A stretch of 64,000 nt of DNA from Mytilus californianus (GCF_021869535.1 NW_026262745.1:8494001-8558000); one strand, 5' to 3'. Positions 6,383 through 34,745 are shown, numbered from the stretch's first letter. The notes: generated by a model from the letters alone, not told the origin. Translations and numbers: made by a program.

Positions 6383-6772
6383 TTTGTTGCAATCCTTCAA
6401 ATTTATAAATAGCTTACCTCGTTTTGAATCGGTGTTAAAATATTACTATTTGTAGGTAAACACACGTGGGTAAACAGTCCTGTGAATATATACATTATTA
6501 ACCTTTTCAATAGTGTTTAAATCATGACTGTAATTATAAATGAATAAGAATAAAACCGTTGAAGAAGAGCTTATACAGATATCTTTATTTTTAAAAGATG
6601 GTTCAGAGACACTATCGATGGACATTCTACTGAAAGACTCGATAAATGTTCCTTAATTTGTTGTTTTGAGTAACTTAGCATGAATTACATGGTGGGACTG
6701 TTTAATTTTGTTACAAGCTACTTATATAAAAACAAGATGAGATCAACAGAGCTCAACCTACGGGATACGTAT

Positions 6773-8539: not shown

Positions 8540-10400
8540 ATTTCAAACAAAACGGTGAGTGTCACTGATGTATTTCTGAACAGATTTAAAAATAGCAATA
8601 TTCATATCATAAGAAAATAATCTGTTTCCAAAAAGTAATAAGTCAATATTTATGTCAACATTATCAACAATTGAGTGAATGGAATCAAGTAAGATCTGTC
8701 TAACATCATTGCGTGTACTTAGGGTAAATAAAAAAGAAATGCTGGTTATCCTCAATAGGGGGATTACAGTTTGCACAAATAGTGTTCTCTAATAAGAACT
8801 GATTAAACAAATGAGATTTTAGGTTGCTAGCATTATTTCTGAGTTGACAATGACTAATATTATGTTTCCTTATCCAATAATTAAAAGGTTTAAATATGTC
8901 ATCAGTCCTATAAAACTTGTCCAGTCTACCTCTAAATATACACAAACTTAGGAATTTTAGTCTTATAGTGGAAGGAATGAAACTATTAAAGTAAGAGCTA
9001 GTTCTAGGAAATGGGGGTAAAAAAGTATAATGTTTATTCCTCAACGTATAAGGAGTTTGTCTGGTAAAATATGGCTGGACTAACTCATATAAGTATGCAG
9101 GTGTCATCCCATTTAATATTTTATAAAACAGTATAAGCGTATGTTTATTTCGTCTATTCTCCAGAGTTTCTAATCCTAATTCAATTTAAAGTTTTTGTCT
9201 TGAGGAACTACGCCGTAGTCCAGTATTAATTCTAGCAGCTTCTATTTGAATATTTTCAAGAAGCTCGGACTCGTGCAGGGAGCAATTGCCCCAAACAACA
9301 TCACCATACTCTAATATAGGTCTAATGAAAGCATAATAAATACGTATAAGTGAATTCCTGTCTAATAAAAGTGTCTTTTTGTTGTTTGGATGTACAAGTA
9401 CCCGGCCACGTCCACTTGTAGTTGTTGTATTTGTATTTTTATCCATCTGATGAGTTAAGCCTTTTTCAAATGATTTTATAGCTCGTTCTTATGTTGTACT
9501 GTTACACCACTGGCCCAGGTTAGGGGGAGGGTTGGGATCCCGTTGACATGTTTAACCCCGCCACATTCTGTATGTATGTACCTGTACCAAGTCAGGGGCC
9601 TGTAATTCAGTGGTTGTCGTTTGTTTATGTGTTACATATTTGTTTTTCGTTCATTTTTTGTACATAAATTAGGCCGTTAGTTTTCTCGTTTGAATTGTTT
9701 TACATTGTCATTTCGGGGCCGTTTATAGGGGTTCGGGGCTGACTGTGCGGTATGGGCTTTGTTCATTGTTGAAGGCCGTACGGTGACCTATAGTTGTTAA
9801 TTTCTGTGTCATTTGGTCTCTTGTGGAGAGTTGTCTCATTGGCAATCATACCACATCTTCTTTTTTATATTAACTTGTCGAAGCACAGATAAACGAGAGC
9901 ATGCTTTTTATAAATATTATCAGTATGTGTGTTCCATGAAGCTGATGACTGAAATGTTATCCCTAGATGACAGTGAATATTTATTTTCTCAACTTCTTCA
10001 CCATTTATCCCAAAAAATACAGGTGGATTCCCTTTCCCTTCTAGTAAACACAATATGTTAAAATTAAATTGAACAGCCCATGATTTTGCCCAGTTTGAGA
10101 TAACATCTAAGTCATCAGTCAAAGAAGCAGCTGCTACAGCATGATCATTCTCTATTATAACAAATAAAGAAGTGTCATCTGCAAAAACATTAACAATGTC
10201 ATTTACTATATCATTTATGTAAATGAGAAACAGAAAGGGTCCCAAAACTGATCCCTGAGGGACATCTGCATGTATACTTCTAAGAGTTGATGAAAAGCCT
10301 TCTGAAACTACCTTTTGTTGACGAACTGAAAGATATCTTTCTATCTAAGATAAGAGCTGATCATTTAAGCCAGATTGTTGAAGTTTAAATAAAAGTCCTT
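8540..10400 (-). mobile_element. Degenerate CR1/L2-type LINE reverse transcriptase, interrupted by a short interspersed element at about 9395-9870
   Basis: VPQGSVLGPFLFLIYINDI..FADDTSLF, YAFIRPILEYGDVVW and SFIPSTIRL motifs in broken frames. Confidence 0.85.
9395..9870 (+). mobile_element. Short interspersed non-autonomous repeat; related copies near 3005-3125, 39470-39575 and 63320-63610 (minus)
   Basis: Shared tail ggtgacctatagttgttaatttctgtgtcatttggtctcttgtggagagttg..cattggcaatcataccacatctt recurs within the window. Confidence 0.75.
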
Positions 10401-11029
10401 TATGCCAAAAAACATGGAAAGGATGCCCCTAAACGCACGAACGATGTTCACTAAAACCAAAGTTTTTGGCGGAAATGCAGAGAACTCGAAAGTTGTCTAT
10501 TGTGTCACAGCACACCAATAAAACTGTAAAATACAAAAGACACAAAGTACCGATCTAAGAGTACTCGCAGTTACAAAAAGCAAGTTCAACTACCGTGATT
10601 TTTTTTTTTTATTTTAGTTGATACCAATTTTCGTTGACTGACCACAAACTATATTTTCGTTGATATTTAATAACGTGATTTTGACAACGTCGGCACACAA
10701 GAATATAGATAATTTGTACTTCGTTGAACGTTTAAAGTAAGAAAATTTGGTTCGACAATTCTTTTAATCTAGTTAATTCAATATATTATATAATGCTTTA
10801 TTTCGATTTACTAGTATTAGAAGTACAACTTTGCTCCTCTAATTGGAGATTTGTATGAATTTTCCTTATGCCATAACAGATTTGCTTTGATTACTAAATA
10901 TATGTCGGACTTAACGTACGGAGTAGAAAACTGACAATATTTGTCTTTTTTGCTACTTTATCTGAAATATCGCTCCTGCCAAGCTTCGGGTTGATAATTT
11001 TTCTATAGATCTTATAATCATACTTCTTA

Positions 11030-15639: not shown

Positions 15640-17653
15640 TTAGTTAGGTGTAATTCTGTACATCTCCATGTACTCTCCACCAACAACAAACAATGTTTCG
15701 TAATCGTCATTGTCTAAAAAGATATCGCGAGGTTCTGTAATACTGTCGAACTTGTCAAGAATTCTTCTTTGTCTGGTACCGTCTTCAGAGAGGACATGCA
15801 ATGACCCTTCGTTAGCTCGATTAACAAATAAAGTTAAACCGGATGGCAACACGATTATACTTTCAATCGGTTTACTTTCTTCGTCATCAAAGCAGTACAC
15901 TTCATCTCCTTGAAGTGTTATGCATTTGATTTCGTTATCTTTTGTAGTAACAACAATCTTTCTTCGATAAACATTCATACCATTTACACCGCAATCTGTA
16001 TTTATAGCAACGACGGATGTCATTTCCTCTGAACTGTCGGGGCTTGCTGTCGAGGAAAATTTTTTAATGGCATTATCTACCACTATATAAATGTCTTCAC
16101 GATATTTGCACAATGCTCCCACATAATCATTATTAAAAATCAGCAACTCCGGCTCTTTAATGGCGTCCCTTGCTATCTCTGCTTTGTACAGTTGACTGGA
16201 TGCACACGAGATACATATTAGATTTTGGTCTTTGTCGTAACAGAAACGGCGAGGTTCCCCACTGAACTCAGTTGTATTTATAACAGTTCCAGTTTTTTTG
16301 TCAACTATCTGAAGTTCCTCCGACTCGGTACCAAGAACAATGTTGTCATTTCCTATACAAACTCCGCAGTATAATTCGGAACCATTGATATGATAAGTCT
16401 CAACTAATTCCACTCTGACATTCTCATATTCTGGATAAGGTGCACATCCAATATTTTACAGCACTTGTATATATCATCGGCTTGGCCAGCTAAATCGTTT
16501 TCCCCAATTTTATTAAATGTACCAATATTTTCTGCTGTTTCCAAGTGCAATTCATGCCAGATTTCTCAAGTGCTCTAAAATTTCATTCTTTATAAATATG
16601 AGGTCAAGTAAATGATCATTCCTTATGGCCTAAATTGTTTATTTGACGTACACTTGCTTTGAGTTGCTTCTTCAATGTGTCAACGTGGATAAAATATTGT
16701 GTTCTTGTCGCAAACTCTCTAACAACTCTGTCAACACTCATCCAGTGGTCTAAACTTGCAATTAATTGTTCCAGTAAACGTATTCGAATGTTGAAACTAG
16801 TATTTTCATCGTCACGAAATAAATGCAACTGTTTAGTAAATGTTTCAAACAAACAGTCTAGATTGGATTTAATCATAGCAAGAAACTCTTTAGCTTCTTC
16901 CTCCGTGTTATCGGTCATAGCTTTAAATTTGCTTTTTTGTTGTTCCTTTTCTTTTAAAAGTTTAATTGTTGCGTATTTAATGCTTTCGAGTTTATCATGA
17001 AGAGTGATGCAAACGTCGTCAGAACCGGTTGTTTCTTCAATCGATTTAACGTTTTCACAGCACCGGTGGTTTGAAGAGACGCACTGAATACAGCATAGCT
17101 GTTCGTGTTTGAAACAAAAAGCTTCGATATTATTCGTTGGGTGTGTATTGCATTGTTCTGAGATTGCATGTAAATCAATTCCAGATGTATTAGATCCCAG
17201 GTCTTCAAGAGCAACAACAAGATGTGTAGAGGAAAGCTTCATCCAGCTGTGCATTGTATTACATTTTTCACAGAAAGTTTCATCACATTCTTTGCACCAG
17301 AACTTGGCCACGGACTGTTGTTGGTGTCGTTTACAGGCACCACAGTCTTGTTGTTGGTCTTCCTTGTTTCTTGCAATCATAATTGATAGAATAAGATTAT
17401 TTTGAAGTGCCGCTGACCATTCATCTGTAGTTGCTTTAACATCTTTAGGTTTCACAACTGACTTGCAAACTGGACATGAAAACTGGGTTAGTTTACTATT
17501 CTTGTTCCGCCCCATATTTAAAATGTGTTCGTGGATGCATTGCTTACAAAATAAATGAAGAATAGGTAAAATTTTCGGCTGTTTAACTGTTTCTGAACAG
17601 ATCGGACAACTAAATAAATGTAACTGAACCTCTTTCGGTTTAGATAACGCCAT
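15640..17653 (-). pseudogene. TRIM paralog of 4397-6382, disrupted by three frameshifts and loss of a RING cysteine
   Basis: ORFs 16616-17653 (RING/B-boxes/coiled coil) and 15640-16413 (propeller) align end to end with the 4397-6382 protein. Against that paralog there is a +1 shift near 16630, a 25-nt insertion at 16549-16573 and a -1 shift near 16440 (net +1, matching the offset between the two ORFs). RING LPCMHSF has become LPILHLF. Confidence 0.9.
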
Positions 17654-17966
17654 TTTTCTGTCTTTGTTTCTGTTGATTTACTTCCGCTATACTGCGCTTT
17701 ATTTATAACAGTAATTTGTAAATGAGGCTACCTTAATTGTTTGTATATGTTGGATAAAATTTTGCCAGGTTTTATAAACTCTAACCTTACTTTTTACTGA
17801 TTAAAACAAATATGAAATTGTTAAACGATCGTTTAAGTATATCTTAAAATTTAGCGAAGCCAATATCACTAATATTATTTATAATCAAGTGTTTAATTTT
17901 CACAGGTAAGCGAGCAAACAATGTGTGTTTACATTTTCCACATTATTGACCACGTGTGAAAACAAA
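17654..17966. promoter_or_regulatory. Short divergent promoter region shared by the TRIM pseudogene and the selenoprotein gene
   Basis: Start codons point away from each other with 313 bp between them. ETS-like ACTTCCGC at 17680-87 and E-box CACGTG at 17951-56. Confidence 0.55.
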
Positions 17967-18118
17967 ATGGCTAGTGACAAATCTATTGCAGATGAACTTG
18001 GAAAGATTACTTTGTTTTCCAAAGAGGGCTCTGAGATACTTGCGAATGTCGTTCTACCTAAGGATATCAAAAAATATTCTTTATTGGTTTTCTTAAGAAA
18101 TCTGGCATGAATTGCATG
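17967..18118 (+). CDS. Selenoprotein coding exon 1, containing the Sec TGA at 18108-18110
   Basis: ATG in AAAATGG context. The frame continues past TGA as ATT GCA TG into a strong GTAAGT donor at 18119. Confidence 0.88.
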
Positions 18119-21100
18119 GTAAGTGTAATTTCTTCACTTTGACTGCATGATAACTTGTTTAAAATTTACCAGACTGAGACCTAACGTATTGAAAATATTT
18201 AAATCGGTTTCCCAACCGTTTTCATTTTTTCATATCTCAAAATGCCTACCCTCAAGTTCTTATTGACACTTTCCGTAATGAATTGTGAAAAAACTACCTG
18301 TCTTCCTATAAAACATACTAGGTAAACAAATTCAGCAAATAAAAAGGAATTCATGGCTTCCTATATCTATCATATGGCTGTCAAGAAAGAAACTTTTACT
18401 ACATAAAACCTCTTTTGTACCACCTTACACAACTTCAGCTGTTGATCCAAAGATGGATTATCGCTAGGTTATACGTACTATATATCAAACAAAATCAATT
18501 TTATTAGTTTAAAATCCAAACAATAGGATTCACTGTGTCTAATCTACCCAAGCAAAAAATGTTTGGACTCGATGGTATCTAATATCCGGCACGGTGACGG
18601 AAAATCAATAGACAGAGAAAAGGTAGTTTTCTGTTTATTTATTTGTTATTGTTATGATATCGGAGAATATATATACATATATAACTGTTTTATATTGTGA
18701 GATGTAATTTTTTCTACAACCGTTCTAGATTAACAGAGAAATAAGAAAAAATGCACGTCAAAATGACGAATTGAGTGAATCTTGCCTCGAATTTGTTTAA
18801 TTTCTCCTTAAATTGTTCACATAGTACGGAAAGAAAGGTACTGAAAGAAAGATATTGACATGGAGATTGCAAAACTAGTCACTTTGAGCACTTCAATCCT
18901 TGTATTTCTGCGTATGGAACCAAAGAAATAGGTCATGTCAAAATGGAAGCACCCGGTTTTTATCAATGTTGTTTACTACACAATGACCCGGTTTTGTCTA
19001 TGTATAGAACCCGGTTTTGTTCATTTTATGAAAAACAACGTTAACACTGGTACCCTGAAACAAAAAAATAAATTAACAAATGGCTGATCATGTGGGTTTT
19101 CAAACCAGATACTTCAATGAAGCTTGTGGCCAAGTTTAATTAAATTGTTAAAGAGGAGAAGATTGTTGTTAGTTAATTGGCAAAAACGCAAAGAAATGGT
19201 AAAAATCGTAATTAAAGGTCAATAATTCTTACAAGGATATCGACCAAGTTGACTTATTCGTATATATTGTCTTGCTGATCATTTTTTCTATATAACTTTT
19301 ATATATTTCAAGATAATAGACAGAAATGGAAAAAAAGGAGAAATTTGTCATTCAAGGACATTGACTTCTATAAGAATTCGTGTGAGAGTTTTGATGTGTA
19401 TGGACAAAAGGTAGAGCTCAACATTATGAACATATCAGCCCCTGTTAAATTTTCTCTATCTATAGCTGTTTTCAAATAATAGACAAAACTTGCATCCCCC
19501 TATGTTCTATTTTAAGCCATGTCGGCCATCTTTGTTGACAAGCGGGGGTCATCAAAAACTTTTTAAACTAGATACATGTACCCCAATGATGATGAAAAAC
19601 AGTTAAACATAAGTTCGTTAGACCTTTTAAAACCGACATAAGATTGTGGATAAGGTTTGTTAAATGTATTGTAGCCCAGTAATTTCAGAGGAGAAGATTA
19701 TGTAAAAAATGGACGACACACTAAATTCCAAAACATATAAACGAACCAAAATTAAAAAACATACAAGACTAACAAAGGCGAGAGGCTCCTGACTTGGGAC
19801 AGGCGCAAAAATGTGGCCGGGTTAAACATGTTTTTTGAGATCTCAACCCTCCCCCTATAACTCTAACCAATGTAAAATAAACAAACACACAGCAATACGC
19901 ACAGTAAAACTCAGTTAATTAAAAGTCCGAGTTGTGAATATTTGAATATATTTACCTATGTTGAAAGACATGCATAATGTCAAATCATAAAAATACAAAT
20001 GGTTTAGTCTCTAAGAAACTTGTAAGATTTCTGCTACTATTTTTGCCAAATAAGTGCAATTTTGGTACTCGTCGCAATTTGGGAACTGTGACGTTCAATA
20101 ACAAAACGATAGACAGAAAACAATACAAACATGTAGCATTGAAAAAAAAAATGTAAATATTTATTACAATACTATTTTTCACAACATGCCTCCTCTATAA
20201 AGTTATCATTTCAAATATCTTGATTATTTATATTATAATGTTAGTCACGAATCATACACAGTTCATGCATTGACATTATAGTTGTTTCCCTCATTTTACA
20301 TTTCACTTATACTGTAACGTGTGAAATTTTGAAATGTCTAGATCCAAGTGGTATCATAGGAAAATGATGTTCTGTTTCAAAATATTTTATGTTTTTGTAG
20401 TCAGATGAAGATTCAGGCCTTTCGCCAAATCGAGTCAACACTTACTCAGAATGACATCAGGCTTGTCTTCATCAGCAACTCTACATCAGAGCAGACGACA
20501 GAATTCTTGCAGATTACAACAGTGTCCGTATGTGGAGATCTATTCTCGGATCCACAACTTCATCTGTATAAATTGTTCAGTTTAAAGAGGGGTCGGTTCA
20601 GATCACTTTTTATGCCTATTGTTTCTGGTTTGCGAAAATATGGAATGAAAGGAGTAACTGAAGGTATGAGCAAAACAGAACTTATTAACTCAAGTTTTTG
20701 TGAAAAAATCTGAAGTTCCATAATTAAAGGACACATACGAAAAATTACATTTGATGGCGTATATGGAAAATTGCTATCAAATATTTAACTATGTTTGCCT
20801 ATATCATGTATATTGTTATACTGGGGTGAATGAGCAAGTTTATTCCGATTGCGTCATTAAGCACAGGCACTTGTCTCAGAATTTTTCCCCTATATACCTT
20901 AATATAACGTGTTATATTAAGGTATATAGGAAAAAAAATTCTGAGACAAGTACCTGTGTCATTAAGTCTGAACTTGACTACAATAGTTGCTCGAAGTTAA
21001 ACTTGCGCTACCATGATTTGTTTTTGTTCTTCTTGTATTAATTGTTAATTCATGTTTTATTGTTTCGTTATTCAATGAAATCTGTAACCATGTATGCAAA

Positions 21101-24100
21101 CACAGTTATAGCCTCTACAAATAATGATTATTAATTTATAAGGCGATTGGAATTACAGTGTATGGATATAAGTTTGGACTTTGGACAATAATTTCTGTGG
21201 AAAAATGGTTAAAAGTGGAATTCATAGCAAAAATTTGCAAATAACGAATACTTATCCATGCACGTAAAATTAAACATCTGCTAAAATCAAAAAGAAAATA
21301 TGCTTATCGAGACAATAAGCGTATCTAAAATAATTCCCGTTTGGTAAAGATAATTTTTTAAGAAGCTATCTTTGTTAACCTTGCATCACTTTGTAACAAG
21401 TATTTGTAAGTCGTGAAAATTTATTAATGACTTTAAAATACCTACAGGTATTAAACTTGGTTACGAAACCGGACATCTAGCAGGAGATTCCTGGCAACAA
21501 GGTGGAACTGTTATCTTAGACACAGAAGCCAACATTAAATATGTGGTAAGTTGTATTTCAAATGTCAGTTTCCATTCATGACTCAATATATAAATAGCAG
21601 AGACGTCTCTGCAAATAGGTACCTATGCCAGGTATTCGGATGAAGTACTCAAATATGAAAAGTAGTGGATTTGAATGAGACTATTATCCTTGTTTGTTTT
21701 AGTGATGGGCCTGCAGGACTTAAACTCGCGCCGAACCATACTCTATACAATTATAAGCTGACCTGTGCTTGTAGTACGAATAATTCCCTACATGTCTCTT
21801 CCGTATTTCAGAAGTAATTTCAGGGGACATTTTTAAAGTTCGAATGTTCGTTCATTAAATTATTTCAATCAAATGTTGATTTTCTAGGACCTGTAGTACA
21901 GTCATTGCAGTTGGTACATTGTTTGTGCAATAATACAGTTCTTTCCTCTAAGCTTATATAATCCACTTTGTGACATTTATTTCTAAAAAAAAAATATTTG
22001 TATTCCATTTCTTGCAAATATAACTTTTCTGTCCAGCGTTTAAATGTATTCTGGTACAACTATCTTTCGGGAGTTGATATACCAGATTAAACGTATGTGA
22101 TATAATTTTCATGTTCTATTCGATACCATTTGATTTCGTTCTAGATACATTCCAAACCTGAGATTAATTACTCTTTGACATGTGAATACTTTGCAATATC
22201 GATTTAAGAATGGATATTGTGAGTGATTTGAACACAATGGGTTTTTGTCGAGCCTTCGACTTTTGTCGAAAAAAGCGAGACATAGCGATCCTACATTCCG
22301 TCGGCGTCATCGTCGTCGTCGGCGGCGTCCACAAATATTCACTCTGTGGTAAAGTTTTTGAAATTTTAATAACTTTCTTAAACTATCCTGGATTTCTACC
22401 AAACTTTGACAGAAGCTTGTTTATGATCATAAGATAATATTCAAAAGTAAATTTTGTTAAAAAAAAATTCTATTTTTTCCGTATTTAACTTATAAATGGA
22501 CTTAGTTTTTCTGCCAAGAAACATTACATTCACTCTGTGGTTAAAGTTTTTGAAATTTTAATAACTTTCTTAAACTATCCTGGATTTCTACCAAACTTGG
22601 AAAGAAGCTTGTTTATGATCATAAGATAGTATCCAGAAGTAAATTTTGTAAAAAAAAAAATCCATTTTTTCCGTATTTTACTTATAAATGGACTTAGTTT
22701 TTCTGCCAAGAAACATTACATTCACTCTGTGGTTGAAGTTTTTGAAATTTTAATAACTTTCTTAAACTATCCTGGATTTCTACCAAACATGGAAAGAAGC
22801 TTGTTTATGATCATAAGATAGTATCCAGAAGTAAATTTTGTAAAAAAAAAATCCATTTTTTCCGTATTTTACTTATAAATGGACTTAGTTTTTCTGCCAG
22901 TTAACATTACATTCACTCAGTGGTTAAAGTTTTTAAAATTTTAACAACTTTCTTAAACTATCCTGGATTTGTACCAAACTTGGACAGAAGCTTGTTTATG
23001 ATTAAAAGCTAGTATCTAGAAGGAAATTTTGTTAAAATTTTGTTTGATTTTTTCCGTATTTTACTTATAAATGGACTTTGTTTTTCTTCCAGTTAACATT
23101 ACATACAGTCTGCAGTTTAAGTTTTTAAAACATTTATTAGATTCATAAACTATCCTGGATTTTTACCAAACTTGGACAGAAGCTACTAACAATCAAAAGA
23201 TAGTATAGAGAGGAATATTTTTATTTATTTTTTTCCTCATTTTTGTTGAGCCTGCGATTAACAGCAAAAGTAGGCGAGACACTGGGTTCCGCGGAACCCT
23301 TACAAATTTTTTCTTTAAATATTTTTATTCTGGTATTCTAGCTAAACCTTACTTTATGTATTTTTAAGATATGATCTACCTATGTATCAAGTAGTGATCA
23401 GTAGTTATCTACAAATAATCTACATATAATTCGTATACAAGTCAACAAGTCTTTTCTCTCTCTAAGGGGGCGTTTATTAAGGACTCAAGAAGCTTCATTG
23501 GTAACTTTATATCCAATTCCAATCCCTGGCCTTCTTTACTCATAATATATGAATATAAAGTAGGCTATAACAGATGTGTGTGTTATTTAACATGAAGCTA
23601 TAGTTTTCATGTAGACAGAGCTTTGTTACATGTGATTAAAAGAAGAGCAGGGTAAAAACCAGTGAAATAGAAATTTAATTTCTGTATTCTTTGATTTTTC
23701 TGCCATATTTCTCTATTCTTTATATTTTTTGTTGATTATTCTTTATTCTTTATATTTAAGCACCCCATTATTCTCTATTCTTTATATTTAAGCACCCCAT
23801 TATTCTCTATTCTTTATCAACATATCTTTATTTTTTTTGGTACATTTTTCTCTATTGTTTATATTTTTTCCCCATTATTCTCTATTTATTCAGTAAACCC
23901 CCATCCAGACCCTCATATTTTGCTGAATGATTTTCCTCTAAGTGTTTTTTTGTAGGTTCATGCTTTGTTGTAACATTGACTTTGTTTTGCTTTCAGCATG
24001 TTGAAGAGCACCCAGCTGATTGGCCAGACATGGAAAAGGTTCTCCCCTTGATGGGAATTCAAAATACTTCTATAGATTACAAGATGGCTGTTAATGATTG

Positions 24101-24137
24101 GCTAAAAGCTAGAGAGGAATCTACAAGCAAATCTTAA
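17967..24137 (+). CDS. PRXL2C: Peroxiredoxin-like 2 (AhpC/TSA_2, PRXL2C/AAED1 or SelU-type) selenoprotein, 217 aa, U48xxC51 motif
   Basis: Exons 17967-18118, 20401-20663, 21448-21545 and 23997-24137 (654 nt). All introns are GT-AG with consistent phases. Spliced protein: MASDKSIADELG..LLVFLRNLA-U-IAC-QMKIQAF..IRLVFIS..DLFSDPQLHLYKLFSLKRG..GDSWQQGGTVILDTEANIKYVHVEEHPADWPDMEKVLPLMGIQ..STSKS*. These motifs match, from memory, PRXL2C FVRHFLCYIC, DPEREIYKRLGMKRG, GDPAQQGGTLIL and VLQLVGVQ. The TGA at 18108-18110 occupies the first redox Cys position. The symbol is a family-level best match, not a tested orthology. Confidence 0.9.
20401..20663 (+). CDS. Selenoprotein coding exon 2
   Basis: Acceptor tttttgtag ends at 20400. 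T20401 completes TGT (Cys51). Donor GTATGA at 20664 (phase 1). Confidence 0.9.
20862..20958. mobile_element. 97-bp fold-back MITE with 8-bp TSD in selenoprotein intron 2
   Basis: Arms of 47 and 48 nt are near-perfect complements around a 2-nt centre. TCATTAAG is duplicated at 20854-61 and 20959-66. Confidence 0.88.
21448..21545 (+). CDS. Selenoprotein coding exon 3 (GDSWQQGG motif)
   Basis: Acceptor cctacag. Encodes GIKLGYETGHLAGDSWQQGGTVILDTEANIKYV. Donor GTAAGT at 21546. Confidence 0.9.
22242..23310 (+). mobile_element. Helentron-type non-autonomous element carrying a roughly 191-bp tandem array (about 5 units), in selenoprotein intron 3
   Basis: GTC microsatellite near the 5' end. Unit starts at 22337, 22528, 22720, 22911 and about 23102. 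Perfect 16-bp palindrome GGGTTCCGCGGAACCC at 23284-99 near the 3' end. Confidence 0.75.
23997..24137 (+). CDS. Selenoprotein coding exon 4 (terminal)
   Basis: Acceptor tttgttttgctttcag. Encodes HVEEHPADWPDMEKVLPLMGIQNTSIDYKMAVNDWLKAREESTSKS, then TAA TAA. Confidence 0.88.
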   Translation, partial: HVEEHPADWPDMEKVLPLMGIQNTSIDYKMAVNDWLKAREESTSKS

Positions 24138-24303
24138 TAACAATAACATAAGATGGCATCAGTGTAAATGAATGAATGCATGTGTTTATACATTTTTTCA
24201 AGTTGCAAAATAGCTTATATTTAATAGCAATTATTTTCATAATTTTACATTTATGTCAAATATTTATTAAATTTTGAATTAGTCGATGATTATCTATAGA
24301 AAA

Positions 24304-24366
24304 GATGATAGAATGATGGTTGATCTATAAAGACATGGTCACTAATCAGCCTGATGGTAAATCATC
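24304..24366 (+). promoter_or_regulatory. Eukaryotic SECIS element (form 2) in the selenoprotein 3' UTR
   Basis: Helix I GATGAT(24304-09)/ATCATC(24361-66). Core ATGAT(24313-17)/TGAT(24352-55) gives the tandem G.A/A.G quartet. Helix II GGTTGAT(24318-24)/ATCAGCC(24345-51), extendable by 2 bp over a bulged C. Unpaired AAA at 24329-31, 11 nt above the core. Apical mini-stem GAC-ATG-GTC. Confidence 0.9.
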
Positions 24367-24424
24367 AATTGATAATCAGATATATTGTTATATACCATTC
24401 TTTTGTATTAATTTTGTAATATGT

Positions 24425-24430
24425 AATAAA
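24425..24430 (+). promoter_or_regulatory. Probable polyadenylation signal of the selenoprotein mRNA
   Basis: AATAAA about 60 nt downstream of the SECIS. Confidence 0.6.
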
Positions 24431-24774: not shown

Positions 24775-25352
24775 AAAAAAATGGGGAATGTGTCCATGGG
24801 ACACAGATGATGCCCCCTTTGCATATAATGTTATAAAGGGACAGAACTCAAGAACGGTAAAATTTGTACTTGATCTGAGTTTTGTGGTAATAAGCATTGT
24901 GTATAAGTTTCATAACATTTGGTTGAGGCAAACTTTAGTTAGAGAACGGAAACAAAAAATTCAGCAATTTTTCCATTTGTAAAGGGGCATAACTCTAGAA
25001 CAGCAAACGTGACGTCACCAAAATTCAAACTCAATCTGTGTTTTATGGTAATAAGCATTGTGCATAAGTATCGTTAAATTTGGTTGAGGCAAACTAAAGT
25101 TAGAGAACGGAAACAAAAAATTCAGCAATTTTTCCATTTGTAAAGGGTATTACTCTAGAACAGTAAAAGTGACGCCACCCAAATTCAAACTCGATTTGTG
25201 TTTAGTGGTAATCAGCATTGCGTTTAAGTTTCATAGTATTTGGTTGAGACAAACTAAAGTTAAAGAACAGAAACCAATTTTGGTACGTAGGGACGTACAG
25301 ACGGACAAGGGTAAAACCTAATGCTCCCTCCGCTACATCGGGGGCATAAAAA
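24775..25352 (-). mobile_element. Helentron-type element with a roughly 158-bp tandem array; same family at 51987-52722 and 59050-59485
   Basis: Shared gatgatgcccc head, repeated ggtaataagcattgtgtataagtttcataacatttggttgaggcaaac units, GACG/GACA microsatellite and terminal hairpin. Confidence 0.75.
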
Positions 25353-25545
25353 AAATGACTACTTGAAATTCATACAATATGTCATAATATCCTTCAATTT
25401 TAGGGCTACAGGATTGGTATACCTGCCTCTGGGTGCAGGATTTTTTACTGCATTGTAGCCAATTGGTGGCCTTGGGCTGTTTTTAGCTCTTTGGTTGGGT
25501 TGTTGACTCATTCCCCGTTTCCATTCTCTATTCTATTTCTAATTC

Positions 25546-27126
25546 AACAAGCATTCTGAGAGTATTGCATGGCAATACATAGTCCCCTACCGTTTAAAAA
25601 TTAATTGTACTGGAACAATATGCTAACTTGATCTATGACTTGTCATGATGTAAACTATATAACAATCTTCAAGCATGATGACAGAGTGTGGAAAACTGAT
25701 TATTTAAGAATGTATTCATCTGATGTTTCAGTCACGTTGAAATCTCGTTCTGGAATTGTTTCCAAAACATGAGATACAAGTGGAAAATTACAAAGAATTT
25801 TTAAAATATTATAATCAAACATAACTCTGTGAAAAAATTGTGTATTTACAATATGTAGTTTTTGAGTAATAAAATTTTCAAATTTTATTACCAATCAAGT
25901 CAGTCTCATTAGCCAAAATGTTGAGAAAATGGGTGAGGGGTACAAGAAATGAATTGACCAGAAACATGTACATCCGATATAATTTTTTTTCTTTTCAAAT
26001 TTCTTAGATATGTATTTTTTCAATCATTTATAACAAAGAAATTGAAATAATATACTTTATGGAATCTACTGACAGAAGATTTACCAGGCATTGGTTCACT
26101 TGTGTTTAATTTTTTTAATTAATTCTTTTAATATGCTTTTTATTTAAAAAAAAAAGAGAAAAATCCCACATTTACAAAATTGACAGCATGGTAAATTTGA
26201 CACTAAAAAGCAACAAAATTTTACAAAACTTTCTTATATTAACACCTACCTATAGTTTTTTTTTAAGTTAAATCTATTCAGATTGGTCCACTTCATCTTA
26301 ATTGAAAGTATGAAAAAAAGTTTAATTGTGAAACTGTGATTTTTTTCATGATTGTAGCCCAAAAATGGGTAAAAATTGATGAAAAATGGGAAAATCATCA
26401 GAATTCGGAACTTTCAAATGGCCGTAGCAAAAAAAGAAGTGCATATGATTTTTTCTTCGCCAATTATCTTTTTAAAGTCATATAAACCCAAAAATCAAGT
26501 AAAGAAAAAAAGTTTAATTCTAGAAATTTTTGGCTCCTCAGAGGTGTACATCCTTCAGTGAATTTTCTAAGTCCAAGGACCATAACTCTGCAAAAAATCA
26601 TCAGACCAGAACAAAATAAGAACTTGGTCTGTAACTTGTCATGATAAAACTATATACCAATTATCAAATATATATCTTCAAGCATGATGAAAAAAAGTGT
26701 GGAAAACGGATTATTTGAGTGAATTTTTTAAGTCCAAGGACCATAACTCTGCACACAATCATCAGACCCAAACAATATTCAAACTTGATCTGTAACTTGT
26801 CATGACAAAACAATGTACAAATTATTAAATGAATATCTTCAAGCATGACGAAAAAAAAATGTGTAAACTGAATATTTGAGTGAATTTTATAAGTCCAAGG
26901 ACCATAACTCTGCACAAAATTATCAGACCAGAACAAAATTCGAACTTGATCTGTAACTTGTCATGATAAAACAATATACCAAATATCAAATCAATATCTT
27001 CAAGCACGAAGAAAAAAAGTGTGGAAAACTGATTTGCCGGACTGACAGATGGACAAACAGACAGACAGACAAACAGACGGAGTGCAAATCTAAAGTCCCC
27101 TTCGACTTTGTCGGTAGGGGACTAAT
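25546..27126 (-). mobile_element. Helentron-type element with a roughly 160-bp array at 26560-27030
   Basis: Sub-terminal inverted repeat AGTCCCCTACCG (25581-92) and CGGTAGGGGACT (27112-23). GACA microsatellite. Repeated tccaaggaccataactctgca units. Confidence 0.65.
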
Positions 27127-27717
27127 TACAAAGGTTCTTTCTTCTGATGATCTGAAGGAAAGGTGTTTGAGTAAAACTGGTTTAACCCAACCACATTTTG
27201 TGCCTGTACTAGGTCCAGCTATATATCTTGACTGTGTGTTGTTCCTTGTCGTTTGTGTGTCAGTAATTTTTTTCAGAGGTGTCCAGTGTTGGTCTGGTCT
27301 GTGTTCCATTCATATTTTTGGCGATTCTTGTTAATGTATTAGATCACTTGATGTTGTGTGCTAAGGTACACTAGAAATTTTTACATGGTACTGGACTTGC
27401 ATTCAAAAGACAAGTAAGTTATTAAACCAAAGTTTTTTAATGGTAAAGTTGAAGTTATTTCATGGAATGTTTTACCAATTCCAATGATCTGGTTGACCCC
27501 TATGAAATATCTGTGTCGCAGATGATGGTGGATATGTTCCATATGATGTAGCCGCAATCTTGAGCTCCTTTTGTCGTTTAGGACTATCACTAATTACATT
27601 TAACAAATTTCCTACATAACTGGTTGATTTCCTATACATTAAAGTGCAACCTTTTCCTTTGCTGTAGAGTAATTTCTTAAATCATTGATATTATTTTTGG
27701 AGAAATATGAACGAGAT

Positions 27718-28258
27718 CATCTTTGCTAGCCAAGGGTTACGATCCACTTCCCTCCTCTCCACCCTTGGCAGATTAAGCCAACATTTGTGATAACAGTGTT
27801 GTGCCATCTATCGGTAGATTAAAGTCACGCCCATTCCGAATACATTATTCTTGGCCAATGGTAGCACTTGAACTCTTCAATTTGGAGGTAAAAACACGGT
27901 AGCGTCTAGATTCTACACACTTGGTAAAGCAGGAAACGAAAATATACGTTGACTTTCATACATTTGTGCAAGAAACATACACAGGAACTTCTATTAAATG
28001 ATTATAAACATTCAAATTGTCACTAAATATAGTCGTGTGTTTAGGGATGTAAAGACTTGTTGCACAATAAGCACGTGCCAATTGTTTACATACACTTTCT
28101 ACATTTACACGATCATGTTATAGACGCTTTTTGATTGGATGCAGCGAGTTTCAACTGCAACCAATGAAAATCACTACCTTGTGTCTCCGAAATTCTATCT
28201 CAATCCGCCAAGGGAGGAGAGGAAGGAAGTGGATCGTAACCCTTGGCTAGCGAAGATG
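27718..28258. mobile_element. Mutator-like MITE (roughly 53-bp TIRs, 9-bp TSD)
   Basis: TIRs CATCTTTGCTAGCCAAGGGTTACGATCCACTTCC.. and ..GGAAGTGGATCGTAACCCTTGGCTAGCGAAGATG. Flanks GAACGAGAT and GAACGAAAT match at 8 of 9 positions. Confidence 0.8.
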
Positions 28259-28882
28259 GAACGAAATGGGATGAGGGGTTAACATTTTTGAGAATGCAAC
28301 TTTCCCAAAAAGATCAGTTTTTCAAACATTTAAAACCTATTTTTTTATGAGTGACTGAAAGGTTGTTATATACACTAGTAAAGTTTATTACGAGGTTTAA
28401 CATCTATCAATTCAAAAGGAAGTTGTGATACGTCCAGATTTTACTTGCCATCTTTCTTCCCTTTCAGGTTTTCCTCCTAGTCATGATAAATATGTGTAGG
28501 TTTAATGTGATGTAATATATCAATTGGGAGCTATTCTATGTCAGACAAAGAGCCACTGGAAAGGGTTTTAAAAACTTCTAGTTATATTTTTGACATAACA
28601 AAAACTTTCAATTTATATATTTTATTAACAATAATTTATAATTGTAATTTTATAACAGTGACTGTGTCAAAAATTTAGATTAATAATTTCATTTCCTAAT
28701 TACAAATTCCAGATGATATTCAAGATAAATGAAATTATTTAAATTAAGTAAAAAAAAACTTTATAATTACAAAAATTAATGTCTGCCCTAATTTAATGTC
28801 TGTGTCGCTATAGCTACAAACACAATAAAAAAACTGGCATGTGTATTCTGTCTTCTGTTGGATTTAGTAAACAAATCTTCTT

Positions 28883-28914
28883 TCAGTAACCATGTGATGA
28901 ATTTGACGATTTAC
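28883..28914 (-). CDS. Candidate ubinuclein terminal exon B
   Basis: Strong acceptor ttgttgttttattttgcag. Phase-1 compatible, encodes GKSSNSSHGY*. AATAAA on the minus strand near 28620. Confidence 0.4.
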
Positions 28915-29140
28915 CTGCAAAATAAAACAACAAATTTACTTAGATTAATTAATTAATTAGAATACTCCAGGATCTTTTTTATGATTTGATAACTCTACTG
29001 TCCCTAATCAGCATCATGTAAAATTGTCAGTGATGGAAAAATGAGTTAAGTATACAGAAAATGAATCAGAAATGTGTTATAAAGTGGAATAATGCACTGT
29101 TTATCCCTGATATGCTACACTCACAGAACTAATTTTTCTC

Positions 29141-29710
29141 ATAATTAAAGAACCTTATTGAGCGTGCTCACATACCCCATTTCCCCACATTGTCATTGGA
29201 GAAATAAAATAAGTGTAAGAAAAAAAAATTGAATCATAATTTCCTGTCAATATGCACATCTACATAGTATGTCCTTATTATCTACACAGTTTCATGAAAT
29301 TCTGTTGTGTGGTTTGAGAGGAGTTGTGATGACAAAAGGTTGCAGCAGTATATTGGGCAAATAAGTACAAAGGGGCGTAACTCCTAGAAAAAAAATTGAA
29401 TCGTAATTTCCTGTCGATATGCACATCTACGTAGTATGTCCTTATTATCCGAAAAGGTTTCATGAAATTCTGTTGTGTGGTTTGAGAGGAGTTGCGATGA
29501 CAAAAGGTTGCAGTAGTATATTGGGCAAATAAGTACAAAGGGGCGTTACTCCTGGAAAAAAAATTGAAACGTAATTTCCTGTTGATATGCACAACTACAT
29601 AGTATGTCCTTATTATCTAAAAAGGTTTCGTGAAATTTCTGTTGTGTGGTTTGAGAGGAGTTGCGATGACAAGAAACAGGACTGACGGACTGACGGACGG
29701 ACAGACAGAT

Positions 29711-29743
<33 letters not shown>

Positions 29744-29762
29744 TGTTGCGTGGGGTATAATA
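29141..29762 (-). mobile_element. Helentron-type element with about 3 units of roughly 168 bp
   Basis: Repeated tatgtccttattatc..gaaattctgttgtgtggtttgagaggagttg units, GACG/GACT microsatellite, and terminal hairpin ataccctccgcaacttgttgcgtggggtat. Confidence 0.7.
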
Positions 29763-30888
29763 AATAAAAGCAGAAATAACTATTCCAGAGCCAATCAATG
29801 AACAAATCAAAATAAACAAATCCAGACAGCCAATAGTGGAAATCTACTTTCAGTGGAATAGATTAGTCTGATATTTTAGAACCAAGTCTTTACTAGCCAA
29901 TGGTAACATATTTATTTATACGCATTCTACCCATCTTCATGATCTTATTGTGTATCAACTTTCAAATATTTCTATTTGCTTTTTATACACAAGAATTACA
30001 AACACATATAGTTTCTACAACTGCATGGCCATCAAGTGTGATACAATATTTCTCCAAAAGAGACAGAAATTTTTCAAATTTAATCACAAGACTTGTTGGG
30101 TTCTGTAAATGTTTAGTTTTTTTTTTTTTACATTTTCGAGAGAGGAATAATATCGTATTGCACAAGATTCTTTTATTGGAATCTCTTTATCATTTATAGA
30201 CAATATGAAGACAAACTTTTATCTTTCTTTTTCAATGATCTGCAAAAATATGCTTTCTTTCTATGTGATGTCATCAGGCATGGTTCCCATTTGTTCCCGA
30301 TGTCATAATAGCAAATTCAGAGGAAAGCAAGAAAATTTGACATTACCATTACATTTGACCAGTGAACAGATGAGATCAAATGTACCACAAACTGATACTC
30401 AATCAGTTGTTGAAAGAATTAACGGCTAAGAATTAGAGAAAAATAAATTTACTGACACACTTCAATCAAGAGTTAATCAATAAATACTGTGACATTTAAT
30501 AAAGAAAATTAAAGAGGTTGTGACAAATAGACAAAAGAAGAAAAGGTGATCATAAATCCAAAGAAAAGTCAATTCAGAAGTCATAAACTGGATATATATA
30601 TATATATATTTATATACATAGTAGTAAATACAAGTACATTGTATGTGTAATACAATCGATGGCAATCATGCTGTATCAGCCATCGGTGATGATATCGATA
30701 TCAGTCACGGTTGCAAAGGCTTTATCAAACCCCTAATCTGTATGATGTCACGAAATCGATATCAGTCACCGTTACAAGGGCTTTATCAAACCCCTTATAT
30801 ATGTTTTACGTCATGTCACGTGAAAAAACATCTAAATTAGTTGTATTTGAGGTACATGTATATAATAAAGTGTATATGATATGGCTAT

Positions 30889-30990
30889 TTCAATATCACA
30901 CTCTGTATCAACCCTCAACCAACATAATCCTTCCAGCAGAGCTCTTGGGATTATATTGGTGTCTCGGGTTGATACAGGTGTGATATTGAA
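30889..30990. repeat. Roughly 100-bp imperfect palindrome (fold-back element)
   Basis: ttcaatatcacactctgtatcaaccc pairs with gggttgatacaggtgtgatattgaa; an inner aacataatcc/ggattatatt stem is also present. Confidence 0.75.
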
Positions 30991-33028
30991 AAAGCCATAT
31001 GATATTTTCTCTCTCTCTCTATATATATATATATACCATGTACCATATATACACAACAAGAGTGCACACACTGTATTTGGTATATTTAGATTTCTAATTT
31101 CAGAACCATAATATAATGCCTCATACAAATACTAATCATGATCAATATCATTTTCTGAAAGTTCTTTAATGATACATGAAATATATTTATAAAAGGCCTT
31201 CGGAACTTTGTATAATGTGTATCTGAATGAAGGTTATCCTAAAAAGCATAAGTTGGTTCATCAAATATATTACAAACCACTATCTAACACGAACAATTTA
31301 GTTTCTTCTCACCTACTTTACTGACCATGACGATAAAGGTTTTACTACAAATATAACATAAACATAACATTATCAATGATCCTTGACTATGAGGTCAAGG
31401 TCAGATAAACCCTACCTGACAGACATATACACCTTACAATCATTTCATACTTCATATATAGTTTACCTATTGCTTATAGTATCTAAGAAGACCAAACTAC
31501 TGACACTTGACATTGACCAATAAACCAGGAAAATCAGGTTAAGACAGATGATACCTGCCAGACAGACATGTAAAACTTACAACCAATGAATCCATATACC
31601 AAACATAGTTGACCTATTGCTTATAATATTTGAAAAACAGACCAAAACACACACAAAAATCAAAGCAAGGACAATGGACATATGAATAATATTTTTTTCT
31701 TACATTTCTATCTTAAACTGAATGCTCTGTAATCTATATAGATACTGCATGATTTAGCTAAACCAACTATAATTATTACAAATCAAAAATAGGCAATATT
31801 TTTCAATACTCATACAATTGTTCCCTTAGTGCAGGTCAATGTCCATGCTAGCAATACAATTAAATACCATACAATCTAGTCATGCTAGTAGTATAAAACA
31901 GTGTGGTATGATTGCCAATGAGACAACTTATAAGTGTGTGCAATAGTTTCTTCTCACTTTTAACACATAATACCTGATTTTCATAAGTAGTCATTGATTT
32001 GCATTTTTCTATCAAACATAACTAAAACATTAAAACAACTATGACTTGGAAGATTCAAGTATTAATAATGTATTGATACGTGTGATTCAACAAGAATAAG
32101 GAGAAACAGGCTCCTTCTAATCAAATGTATTTTAGAGTATATCAAATGGAGATAAGTATTTTTTATATAAAATGAAACAAATCCAAATGTTCTAGAAGTT
32201 TCTTTCTGAGATAAATTTTTTTACACACTGGTCAACCTAGGTTATTAATGGATGCTTTACACATATATAATATATATTATAAAATTGAGAATGGAAATGG
32301 GGAATGTGTCAAAGAGACAACAACCCGACCATAGAACAGACAACAGCAGAAGGTCACCAACAGGTCTTCAATGCAGCGAGAAATTCCCGCACCCGGAGGT
32401 GTCCTTCAGCTGGCCCCTAATATATATATATATTTAAGAGTTTTTATTGTTTAAGTACTCGAGAGGCTACAATAGACAGGTTATCCTGTTTTATATATGT
32501 ATGGCTTTCACATATATGTATAAGGTTCAAGCATTCACCAAATATGTTATTTCTACATAACTTTGAATCACCATGGAAAACATATTTAAATTTTTAAAAC
32601 AAAAACAAAACACACAGAGGCACATGGAGCTGTCTTATAAATTATGGTAGTTCCAAATGGAATTTCCCACAAAATCTTGTGTGTAGAAATTAGCAATTAA
32701 TGATTGTGTTAGAATTCCAATACAAAACATGGCTACTAAAATACAGTATCTTAGCATCATTGGTGATACTTTTACAATCTGACAACAATTGAGTGAACCG
32801 TACACTAAGACAAAGCAAATTCTTACATTTCTTGAAATATACATTAATAGTGTATCAATAAAATCAGGCCCTTTTACCAAAATAATTATCTATGCAAGAA
32901 TAGAAACTTAAAAGAGAAACATCCAGATAAGAATGTTTAACTAGCATAATTTTGACACTTAGCCCAAAGAGCATAGAAACTTCTAATAGCCCATGCAAAA
33001 GATATGATGTTCGAAATAAAAATTATGA

Positions 33029-33183
33029 AATAATTCATGGGGGCTTGAAATTATATTGATTTTACCACGGGTGGCCCTTTATGCTAAATATTTTACCTCG
33101 AGTCATAGCGAGGGGTAAAATATGGGCAAAAAAGGGCGAGCCCATGGTGAAATCAATATAAATTCAAGCCCCCATGGATTATT
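33029..33183. repeat. Roughly 155-bp imperfect palindrome (fold-back element)
   Basis: aataattcatgggggcttgaaattatattgattttacca pairs with tggtgaaatcaatataaattcaagcccccatggattatt; inner atattttacctcg/cgaggggtaaaatat stem. Confidence 0.8.
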
Positions 33184-34548: not shown

Positions 34549-34745
34549 TCAGTATGTTTGATCATAAACATCATCTAGATTGTTTAATATATGAATGTTA
34601 TGTCTTGTTTTTCCAGGTATCAATGGCTTTAAAAAGAGAACTGTTAGGAAATTTAACTTGCAGGGATGGTTAGACCCACATAAGTGTAATTTTATTGTTA
34701 TTTCGAACAATCCATTCATGTTAGGGATAAACCCCATCAATCTTC
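34549..34745 (-). CDS. Candidate ubinuclein terminal exon A
   Basis: Acceptor catacattttag. Phase-1 compatible and open for 64 codons (GRLMGFIPNMNGLF..) to TGA. No recognisable homology. Confidence 0.35.

What the first reader, a model, noticed from the sequence alone, without database searches (positions are those of the whole stretch)
17967..24430. Hidden selenoprotein gene: PRXL2C/SelU-type thioredoxin fold with in-frame UGA (UxxC) and a matching SECIS
Seen in the sequence: the 61-aa ORF at 17925-18110 ends in TGA exactly where PRXL2-family proteins carry the first Cys of the CxxC redox motif. Eight nt later there is a strong GTAAGT donor, and three more phase-consistent exons complete a 217-aa protein with the motif LRNLA-U-IA-C. 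A canonical SECIS sits 167 nt after the true stop. Established knowledge: UGA recoding to Sec in eukaryotes needs a 3' UTR SECIS; the SelU/PRXL2 family has Sec and Cys forms, and human PRXL2C is a Cys form. Inference: this is a Sec-containing PRXL2C-like oxidoreductase that standard gene finders would truncate or split. The family is known; whether this UxxC member is already described for this lineage cannot be judged from here.
Basis: partly seen in the sequence, partly recalled or inferred. Interest (0 to 1): 0.9.

Follow-up and report, generated by a model that had tools for sequence, protein, structure and literature searches.

The report
Mis-annotated mussel SelU/PRXL2C selenoprotein gene
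This is a real four-exon mussel gene for a peroxiredoxin-like (SelU/PRXL2) redox protein whose active-site residue is selenocysteine encoded by UGA. Public annotation truncates it, but the protein family and its selenium-containing forms in invertebrates are already known.

Summary
Exons 17967-18118, 20401-20663, 21448-21545 and 23997-24137 (+), all with GT-AG introns, give a 217-aa protein. It has an in-frame TGA at codon 48 (motif LRNLA-U-IA-C) and a form-2 SECIS at 24304-24366.

- Spliced RNA-seq contigs from at least five other molluscs, and the Haliotis and Crassostrea genomes, carry TGA at the same codon (FLRNFA-U-xA-C).
- Protein sequence is conserved on both sides of the TGA, and the intron lies at the same place inside the Cys codon.
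- A SECIS follows each orthologous stop codon. Its helix 2 stays paired while its sequence changes completely.
- A Cys-form homologue has ACVSC at the same place.

Residues 53-217 are identical to RefSeq "peroxiredoxin-like 2C [Mytilus californianus]" (165 aa). RefSeq therefore starts at Met53 and omits the Sec and the N-terminus, and it does the same in three other Mytilus species.

The family is SelU/PRXL2 (Pfam AhpC-TSA_2). It lies nearest PRXL2C and only slightly further from PRXL2B. I could not build a tree.

Sec-containing SelU proteins in invertebrates, including the mollusc Lottia, were published in 2012. This is a new member of a known kind and a useful annotation fix.

Another note of this scan on this same window records the same SECIS.

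The parts
17967..18118 (+). Coding exon 1: Met1 to the first two bases of Cys51. It holds the conserved strand SLLVFLRNLA and the Sec codon.
   Evidence: The N-terminal 47 aa align with orthologue transcripts (17-26 of 45-47 identical). Codon-position differences against L007 are 11/7/23 for positions 1/2/3, a coding signature.
18108..18110 (+). In-frame TGA, codon 48: selenocysteine, first position of the U-I-A-C redox motif.
   Evidence: TGA is at the same codon in L004/L005, L006, L007/L008, L009, L010, Haliotis L003 and C. virginica L011, and L012/L013. The Cys form is seen in P0014.
18119..20400 (+). Intron 1 (GTAAGT...TTTTTGTAG), phase 2, splitting the Cys51 codon.
   Evidence: The position and phase are the same in Haliotis and Crassostrea (TGA-ATA-GC(G/T)-TG|GTA).
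20401..20663 (+). Coding exon 2 (last base of Cys51 to Glu138).
   Evidence: Pfam AhpC-TSA_2 E 8.7e-6, profile positions 7-65. phmmer hits to mollusc orthologues reach 4.8e-35.
21448..21545 (+). Coding exon 3, carrying the family's invariant HLAGDSWQQGGT block.
   Evidence: Pfam AhpC-TSA_2 profile positions 85-108, collinear with exon 2. The junctions are confirmed by identity with the RefSeq protein P0054.
23997..24137 (+). Coding exon 4, ending in TAA at 24135-24137.
24304..24366 (+). Form-2 SECIS. Helix 1 is GAUGAU (24304-24309) paired with AUCAUC (24361-24366). The quartet is AUGA (24313-24316) with UGAU (24352-24355). Helix 2 is GGUUGAU/AUCAGCC plus 2 further bp. It has unpaired AA and a 3-bp apical stem GAC/GUC.
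   Evidence: Rfam SECIS_1 26.0 bits. Structure of the part between the quartet strands.
24425..24430 (+). AATAAA polyadenylation signal, 59 nt after the SECIS.
   Evidence: Read from the sequence.

Best explanation
This is an intact, expressed-type nuclear gene of Mytilus californianus for a 217-aa thioredoxin-fold oxidoreductase of the SelU/PRXL2 family (Pfam AhpC-TSA_2), closest to PRXL2C (SELENOU2/AAED1/C9orf21). Codon 48 is UGA. The form-2 SECIS in the 3' UTR recodes it to selenocysteine, by the standard eukaryotic route of SBP2, eEFSec and Sec-tRNA (inferred from established knowledge). Sec48 holds the first, nucleophilic position of a U-x-x-C motif that follows the conserved strand LLVFLRNLA. 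Inferred chemistry: Sec48 attacks a peroxide, endoperoxide or disulfide substrate, forms a selenenylsulfide with Cys51, and is recycled by thioredoxin or glutathione, as the first Cys of CxxC does in PRXL2-type enzymes. Shown here: the gene structure, the conserved UGA, coding constraint on both sides of it, and conserved SECIS elements. Inferred: actual Sec insertion, the substrate and the reductant.
For: - Gene model: 4 exons, GT-AG introns, in phase, 217 aa. Residues 53-217 are identical to RefSeq XP_052078832.1, which independently supports junctions 2-3 and 3-4.
- Spliced RNA-seq contigs from other molluscs read straight through the exon 1/2 junction with TGA at the same codon: L004/L005, L006, L007/L008, L009 and L010.
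- The Haliotis asinina and Crassostrea virginica genomes have exon 1 with TGA and the same phase-2 intron.
- The N-terminus before the UGA is conserved and shows a third-position excess of substitutions.
- A homologue carries Cys at the aligned site, SYACVSCQ.
- SECIS_1 matches follow the orthologous stop codons on the coding strand. They are the only SECIS_1 matches in the 9 kb searched around the window gene (26.0 bits), in Haliotis L003 (25.7), in C. virginica L011 (23.1), in the L004 transcript (17.9) and in metagenomic L013 (33.9). L012 has one after its Sec copy (22.3) and a weaker one further downstream.
- Helix-2 positions 1-8 are paired in 5-6 of 6 species with 2-4 different pair types per position, while AUGA/GA and the unpaired As stay fixed.
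- Family: AhpC-TSA_2 on exons 2 and 3. Foldseek against AFDB Swiss-Prot ranks PRXL2C first (human E 4.4e-5, 27% identity) and PRXL2B second (2.4e-3). The top ESM-Atlas cluster is 'C9orf21 protein' for both the mussel and the oyster orthologue.
Against: - There is no RNA or protein evidence from this species, so the 18118-20401 junction rests on orthologues.
- The SECIS scores below Rfam's gathering threshold (26 against 35), has a short 7-bp continuous helix 2, and is not distinguishable by free energy alone (z = -0.63).
- A larger scan with stricter filters did not list it.
- The two closest transcripts (L007/L008) end before any SECIS.
- One M. galloprovincialis assembly copy (L001) is degenerate, so decayed copies of this gene exist in the genus.
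- Subfamily placement is by similarity ranking only. Automatic names of orthologues disagree: PRXL2C, AAED1 and prostamide/PGF synthase-like.
Confidence: 0.9

Rival explanations
1. The RefSeq model is right. UGA-48 is a true stop that ends a short upstream ORF, and the functional product is the 165-aa protein starting at Met53, without the redox motif.
For: RefSeq annotates exactly this in M. californianus, M. edulis, M. galloprovincialis and M. trossulus. A Met lies two residues after Cys51 in mytilids.
Against: - The Met is not conserved. Gastropod orthologues have L or V there and other start points.
- The 47 residues before the UGA are conserved as protein, with a coding substitution pattern.
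- The truncated protein would lack the strand and the UxxC/CxxC motif that a Cys-form homologue retains.
- A conserved SECIS would have no purpose.
Confidence: 0.04
2. The window copy is a pseudogene or decaying paralogue whose TGA is a nonsense mutation.
For: A degenerate copy exists in an older M. galloprovincialis assembly: exon 2 in three pieces with stops, and a 7-nt deletion in SECIS helix 2.
Against: In the window all four exons are open, all splice sites are canonical, and the SECIS is intact. The TGA is shared by bivalves and gastropods at the same codon, which a random nonsense mutation cannot explain. The protein is identical to the RefSeq product over 165 residues.
Confidence: 0.03
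3. It is a real selenoprotein but an orthologue of PRXL2B (SELENOU3, prostamide/prostaglandin F synthase) rather than PRXL2C. In that case it is the same gene as the published Lottia Lg.SelU3.
For: NCBI names the oyster orthologue 'prostamide/prostaglandin F synthase-like'. The only solved relative found by sequence is PRXL2B, 9us9, E 1.2e-8. Jiang et al. 2012 place the Lottia and Capitella Sec proteins in their SelU3 (prFsy) lineage and found Sec in the C9orf21-like lineage only in Trichoplax (PMC3473315). The Foldseek margin is small.
Against: PRXL2C entries rank first in Foldseek and align over equal spans, 143 against 143 residues, whereas PRXL2B spans 134 residues against 140 and its profile alignment to 9us9 carries a 5-residue gap. 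The top ESM-Atlas hit is the chordate C9orf21 cluster for two orthologues. RefSeq names the Mytilus and Pomacea proteins PRXL2C/AAED1.
Confidence: 0.25

Closest known systems
PRXL2C (SELENOU2, AAED1, C9orf21) of vertebrates
   Same: It has the same Pfam domain (AhpC-TSA_2) and a similar length. It is the best Foldseek match (human E 4.4e-5, 27% identity, residues 74-216 against 2-144 of the mussel orthologue, with equal spans). It is also the best ESM-Atlas cluster. RefSeq gives the mussel gene this name.
   Different: Vertebrate PRXL2C is a Cys protein (PMC13134290), whereas the mussel gene has Sec at the first position of the motif plus a SECIS. Identity is only about 25-27%, and orthology was not tested by a tree.
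PRXL2B (SELENOU3, prostamide/prostaglandin F synthase), including the published invertebrate Sec forms Lg.SelU3 (Lottia) and Ct.SelU3 (Capitella)
   Same: It belongs to the same family. The profile of the mollusc clade matches PDB 9us9 at E 1.2e-8. Jiang et al. 2012 report Sec-containing members with SECIS in a mollusc and an annelid (PMC3473315).
   Different: The Foldseek match is weaker than for PRXL2C (2.4e-3), and the profile alignment to PDB 9us9 has a 5-residue gap. Whether Lg.SelU3 is this gene's orthologue could not be checked, because no sequence is held.
SELENOU1 (PRXL2A) of fish and birds
   Same: It is the classical Sec-containing SelU, a thioredoxin-fold protein with Sec/Cys interchange across lineages (PMC3316567, PMC13134290).
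   Different: It is a different subfamily: PRXL2A does not appear among the 30 best Swiss-Prot structural matches. The 2026 vertebrate survey found Sec only in the SELENOU1 branch of its data set, so this gene is a Sec form outside that branch.
SELENOL (UxxU peroxiredoxin-like selenoprotein)
   Same: It is a related AhpC/TSA-like fold and appears among the AFDB cluster matches.
   Different: Identity is 17-19%, it appears only as a fold-level match, and its motif is UxxU with two Sec. Here there is one Sec and one Cys.

Membership tests
Eukaryotic selenoprotein gene | In-frame UGA at a position where homologues carry Cys | tested here: met
   U48 aligns with the first Cys of SYACVSCQ in P0014/L012 copy 2.
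Eukaryotic selenoprotein gene | UGA conserved in orthologues, with protein-level conservation on both sides | tested here: met
   TGA is at the same codon in five transcript species, two further mollusc genomes and two metagenomic loci.
Eukaryotic selenoprotein gene | SECIS in the 3' UTR: AUGA/GA quartet, unpaired AA, helices 1 and 2 | tested here: met
   All elements are present at 24304-24366. Rfam SECIS_1 scores 26.0 bits, below the gathering score of 35. Orthologous SECIS elements show compensatory helix-2 changes. SECISearch3 was not available.
Eukaryotic selenoprotein gene | Selenium actually incorporated at the UGA | not testable with these tools
   This needs 75Se labelling, mass spectrometry or ribosome profiling.
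SelU / PRXL2 family (Pfam PF13911 AhpC-TSA_2) | AhpC-TSA_2 domain | tested here: met
   Exon 2 scores 26.5 bits (E 8.7e-6) and exon 3 scores 16.7 bits, at collinear profile positions. Each piece alone is just under the cutoff of 27. All orthologues carry precomputed PF13911.
SelU / PRXL2 family (Pfam PF13911 AhpC-TSA_2) | Thioredoxin-like fold with a C/U-x-x-C motif after the first conserved strand | tested here: met
   The motif U-I-A-C follows LLVFLRNLA. The AF2 model of the orthologue fragment (pLDDT 77.8) matches PRXL2C and PRXL2B with probability 1.0. The model lacks the N-terminal 52 residues, so the motif's place in the fold is inferred.
PRXL2C (SELENOU2) subfamily | Closer to PRXL2C than to PRXL2A or PRXL2B | tested here: met
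   Foldseek gives PRXL2C 4.4e-5 to 2.2e-4 and PRXL2B 2.4e-3 or worse, with PRXL2A absent from the top 30. The Atlas top cluster is C9orf21. The margin is small.
PRXL2C (SELENOU2) subfamily | Groups with PRXL2C in a phylogenetic tree | not tested
   The word-indexed protein search never returned vertebrate PRXL2 sequences, so there was nothing to build a tree from.

The most novel reading that the evidence does not exclude
The mollusc genes form a Sec-retaining branch of the PRXL2C (SELENOU2) lineage, present across bivalves and gastropods and in an unidentified organism with intronless copies. This would run against the published inference that this lineage converted to Cys early in animal evolution (Sec seen only in Trichoplax) and against the recent statement that all Sec-encoding SelU genes are SELENOU1. 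The branch is systematically truncated in RefSeq.
Probability: 0.45. Interest if true: 0.4.

Novelty: new member of a known kind. Interest (0 to 1): 0.32.

Why it matters
- It corrects the annotation of a gene that RefSeq truncates in at least four Mytilus species and mis-handles in oyster, abalone and apple snail. The 165-aa proteins in the databases lack the catalytic residue.
- It adds a well-supported entry to mollusc selenoproteomes.
- It gives a natural U-x-x-C / C-x-x-C pair in a PRXL2-type protein whose biochemistry is poorly known, which is useful for asking what Sec buys in this fold.
- It does not open a new kind of biology. Sec forms of SelU-family proteins in invertebrates have been in print since 2012.

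Tried and rejected
- The exon-2 peptide against PDB sequences gave nothing. Only the profile reached PRXL2B.
- Two profile searches of the 5.8-billion-protein index (the second at E up to 10) returned only the mollusc-type clade and no vertebrate PRXL2 proteins. The PRXL2A/B/C tree could therefore not be built.
- The AFDB fold-cluster search gave a mix of SelL, PAMM, PGF synthase and bacterial AhpC-like entries and did not resolve the subfamily.
- MAFFT could not align the divergent SECIS elements, so I did not build a covariance model from the orthologues. I tabulated helix-2 pairs anchored on the quartet instead.
- Free-energy folding of the SECIS is not significant (z = -0.63). My own pattern scanner finds 7 candidates per strand in 64 kb at the same score, so it gives only about 0.03 expected in a 300-nt UTR.
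- The whole-window Rfam scan, with its stricter filters, dropped the SECIS match and listed no other SECIS.
- The L007/L008 transcripts end before a SECIS.
- The paper on mollusc SelP and oyster selenoproteins (PMC6885538) is not held.
- Literature searches for AAED1 or PRXL2C with selenocysteine, and for Mytilus with SECIS, found no description of this gene.
- Pfam on neighbours of the metagenomic homologues did not identify their source organism.
Full report
**What is in the sequence**

The region reads as a four-exon gene on the + strand.
- Exon 1 (17967-18118) opens at the first ATG after an in-frame stop, in a good initiation context (acaaaATGG).
- It runs 47 codons to TGA at 18108-18110, continues ATT GCA TG, and meets GTAAGT at 18119.
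- The acceptor tttttgtag|T at 20400/20401 completes a Cys codon, giving L-R-N-L-A-U-I-A-C.
- Exons 2 (20401-20663), 3 (21448-21545) and 4 (23997-24137) have canonical borders and stay in phase.
- The total is 654 nt, 217 codons, ending in TAA.

There are no Ns in the window.

**Family**

Pfam AhpC-TSA_2 matches exon 2 (E 8.7e-6, profile positions 7-65) and exon 3 (profile positions 85-108), in order.

An exhaustive phmmer search with the exon 2 peptide against 1.84 billion representatives found only 18 proteins. Many of them start at a Met just after the point where the motif would be. This is the signature of gene callers stopping at an in-frame TGA.

**Identity of the window and state of public annotation**

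Residues 53-217 of my model are identical over all 165 positions to XP_052078832.1, "peroxiredoxin-like 2C [Mytilus californianus]". The M. edulis, M. trossulus and M. galloprovincialis RefSeq proteins are also 165 aa, with 7-12 differences.

So the window is M. californianus. The junctions 2-3 and 3-4 agree with an independent gene model. RefSeq begins the protein at Met53 and omits the N-terminus and the redox motif. In Pomacea the orthologue is flagged "LOW QUALITY PROTEIN: thioredoxin-like protein AAED1".

**Is the UGA a Sec codon?**

Intron-less RNA-seq contigs from other molluscs show a single reading frame from an N-terminal Met, through TGA, into the rest of the protein:

| Contig | Sequence around the UGA |
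|---|---|
| L004/L005 | ...VVFLRNFA-U-IAC-QLKVQ... |
| L006 | ...VVFLRNFA-U-VAC-LLKVQ... |
| L007/L008 | ...LLVFLRNFA-U-VAC-QMKIQ... |
| L009 | ...VIFLRNFA-U-LAC-LLRMQ... |
| L010 | ...LLVFLRNFA-U-IAC-HVKIQ... |

The stop is TGA in every case. These contigs also show the exon 1/exon 2 junction in mature mRNA.

In the Haliotis asinina and Crassostrea virginica genomes, exon 1 ends ...FLRN(L/F)A-TGA-ATA-GC(G/T)-TG|GTA. That is the same phase-2 intron inside the Cys codon.

The 47 residues before the UGA align across species, with 17-26 identical. Against L007, nucleotide differences fall 11/7/23 on codon positions 1/2/3. The region upstream of the UGA is therefore under coding constraint.

A homologue on a metagenomic contig has Cys at the aligned site (SYACVSCQ). 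Its tandem neighbour has TGA there (NYA-U-VAC).

**SECIS**

The element at 24304-24366 has these parts:
- helix 1, GAUGAU/AUCAUC;
- the AUGA...UGAU quartet;
- a 7-bp helix 2 extended by 2 bp beyond a 3-nt bulge;
- unpaired AA 12 nt after AUGAN;
- a 3-bp apical stem.

This is a form-2 SECIS. Rfam SECIS_1 gives 26.0 bits, under the gathering score of 35. The E-value of 0.13 is corrected for 4227 families.

On its own this would be suggestive only. The fold energy is not unusual, and a crude pattern scan has a real background.

The comparative evidence settles it. In four of the orthologue and homologue loci searched, the only SECIS_1 match lies just 3' of the stop codon on the coding strand:

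| Locus | Score (bits) |
|---|---|
| Haliotis L003 | 25.7 |
| C. virginica L011 | 23.1 |
| L004 transcript | 17.9 |
| Metagenomic L013 | 33.9 |

L012 has one such match after its Sec copy (22.3 bits) and a second, weaker one at 3857-3920, downstream of its Cys copy.

I anchored six elements on the quartet. Helix-2 positions 1-8 are paired in 5-6 of 6 species, with 2-4 different pair types at each position. AUGA, GA and the unpaired As do not change.

**Subfamily**

An AF2 model of the M. trossulus orthologue (residues after the motif, pLDDT 77.8) matches Swiss-Prot models in this order:
- PRXL2C of human, cow and mouse, and Arabidopsis AAED1 (E 4.4e-5 to 2.2e-4, 23-27% identity, equal aligned spans);
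- PRXL2B / prostamide-PGF synthase (2.4e-3 and weaker);
- PRXL2A is not in the top 30.

The ESM-Atlas feature search puts the chordate "C9orf21 protein" cluster first for both the mussel and the oyster orthologue (0.95, 207 shared features). The only solved structure reached by sequence is PRXL2B (9us9, E 1.2e-8).

I could not obtain PRXL2A/B/C sequences through the tools, so there is no tree. PRXL2C is the best-supported label but is not proven.

**What is known**

Jiang et al. 2012 (PMC3473315) reported more than ten Sec-containing SelU proteins in six invertebrates, including Lg.SelU3 in the mollusc Lottia and Ct.SelU3 in Capitella. They state that in the C9orf21-like lineage only Trichoplax had Sec.

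The 2026 vertebrate survey (PMC13134290) equates SELENOU2 with PRXL2C and SELENOU3 with PRXL2B. It found Sec only in SELENOU1 within its data set.

I found no paper describing this gene in mussels or a Sec form of PRXL2C in molluscs, but the key oyster paper is not held.

**Mechanism**

Shown: a conserved UGA, a conserved SECIS and an intact thioredoxin-fold reading frame.

Inferred from established knowledge of Sec decoding and of CxxC oxidoreductases:
- SBP2 bound to the SECIS recruits eEFSec with Sec-tRNA to UGA-48.
- Sec48 is the attacking residue of U-x-x-C and forms a selenenylsulfide with Cys51.
- A thiol reductant regenerates it.

The substrate is unknown.

**Verdict**

It is an annotation-level discovery within a known selenoprotein family. 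It has a moderate chance of documenting an undescribed Sec-retaining PRXL2C branch.

Noticed in passing
window 16546-16570 (-) and 18092-18116 (+): A 25-nt inverted copy (96% complementary, 21 nt exact) of the Sec-codon region of exon 1 lies 1.5 kb upstream. It sits in the gap between two ORFs (15640-16413 and 16616-17653, minus strand) of what the other first-stage note calls a TRIM pseudogene; I ran no domain search on them. No such match occurred in 100 shuffles. A separate first-stage note covers it.
   Followed up: partly
window 20858-20961 (intron 2) and 49449-49596: Long near-perfect palindromic hairpins give sub-threshold matches to many unrelated miRNA families on both strands. They look like inverted-repeat (MITE-like) elements rather than miRNA genes.
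   Followed up: no
window 22337-23184 (intron 3), 23735-23817, 24868-25274: Three tandem repeats: 192 bp x 4.4 copies (91% matches) inside intron 3, a 32-bp x 2.6 array, and a 160-bp x 2.5 array just downstream of the gene.
   Followed up: no
L001 (M. galloprovincialis GCA_900618805.1, UYJE01005939.1): The copy of this gene in the older M. galloprovincialis assembly is degenerate. Exon 2 occurs in three partial copies with stops and frameshifts, and the SECIS has a 7-nt deletion that removes the 5' strand of helix 2. A newer RefSeq model for the species is intact. This is either a decayed haplotype copy or an assembly artefact.
   Followed up: partly
L011 (Crassostrea virginica) 5987-7829 and 10000-10792: Exons 3-4 and the SECIS are present twice in tandem, about 3 kb apart, behind a single exon 1-2. 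These may be alternative 3' ends, each with its own SECIS, since the annotated protein is 'isoform X3'.
   Followed up: partly
L012 1995-2638 and 3001-3920; L013/L014 2860-3635 (JGI and ENA metagenome contigs): These are intronless homologues (about 46% identical) with a C-terminal hydrophobic tail, from an unidentified organism. L013 and L012 copy 1 have TGA (NYA-U-VAC) and a SECIS within about 10 nt of the stop (33.9 and 22.3 bits). L012 copy 2, in tandem, has Cys (SYACVSC), is split into two ORFs, and has a weak SECIS-like match downstream. Pfam on the neighbouring genes gave only ankyrin repeats.
   Followed up: partly
window about 25000-40000 (by synteny with L001 6241-8071): The downstream neighbour in M. 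galloprovincialis is a ubinuclein-type gene (HUN, UBN_AB domains) on the opposite strand. A first-stage note reports a ubinuclein minisatellite at 36588-37630 in this window.
   Followed up: no
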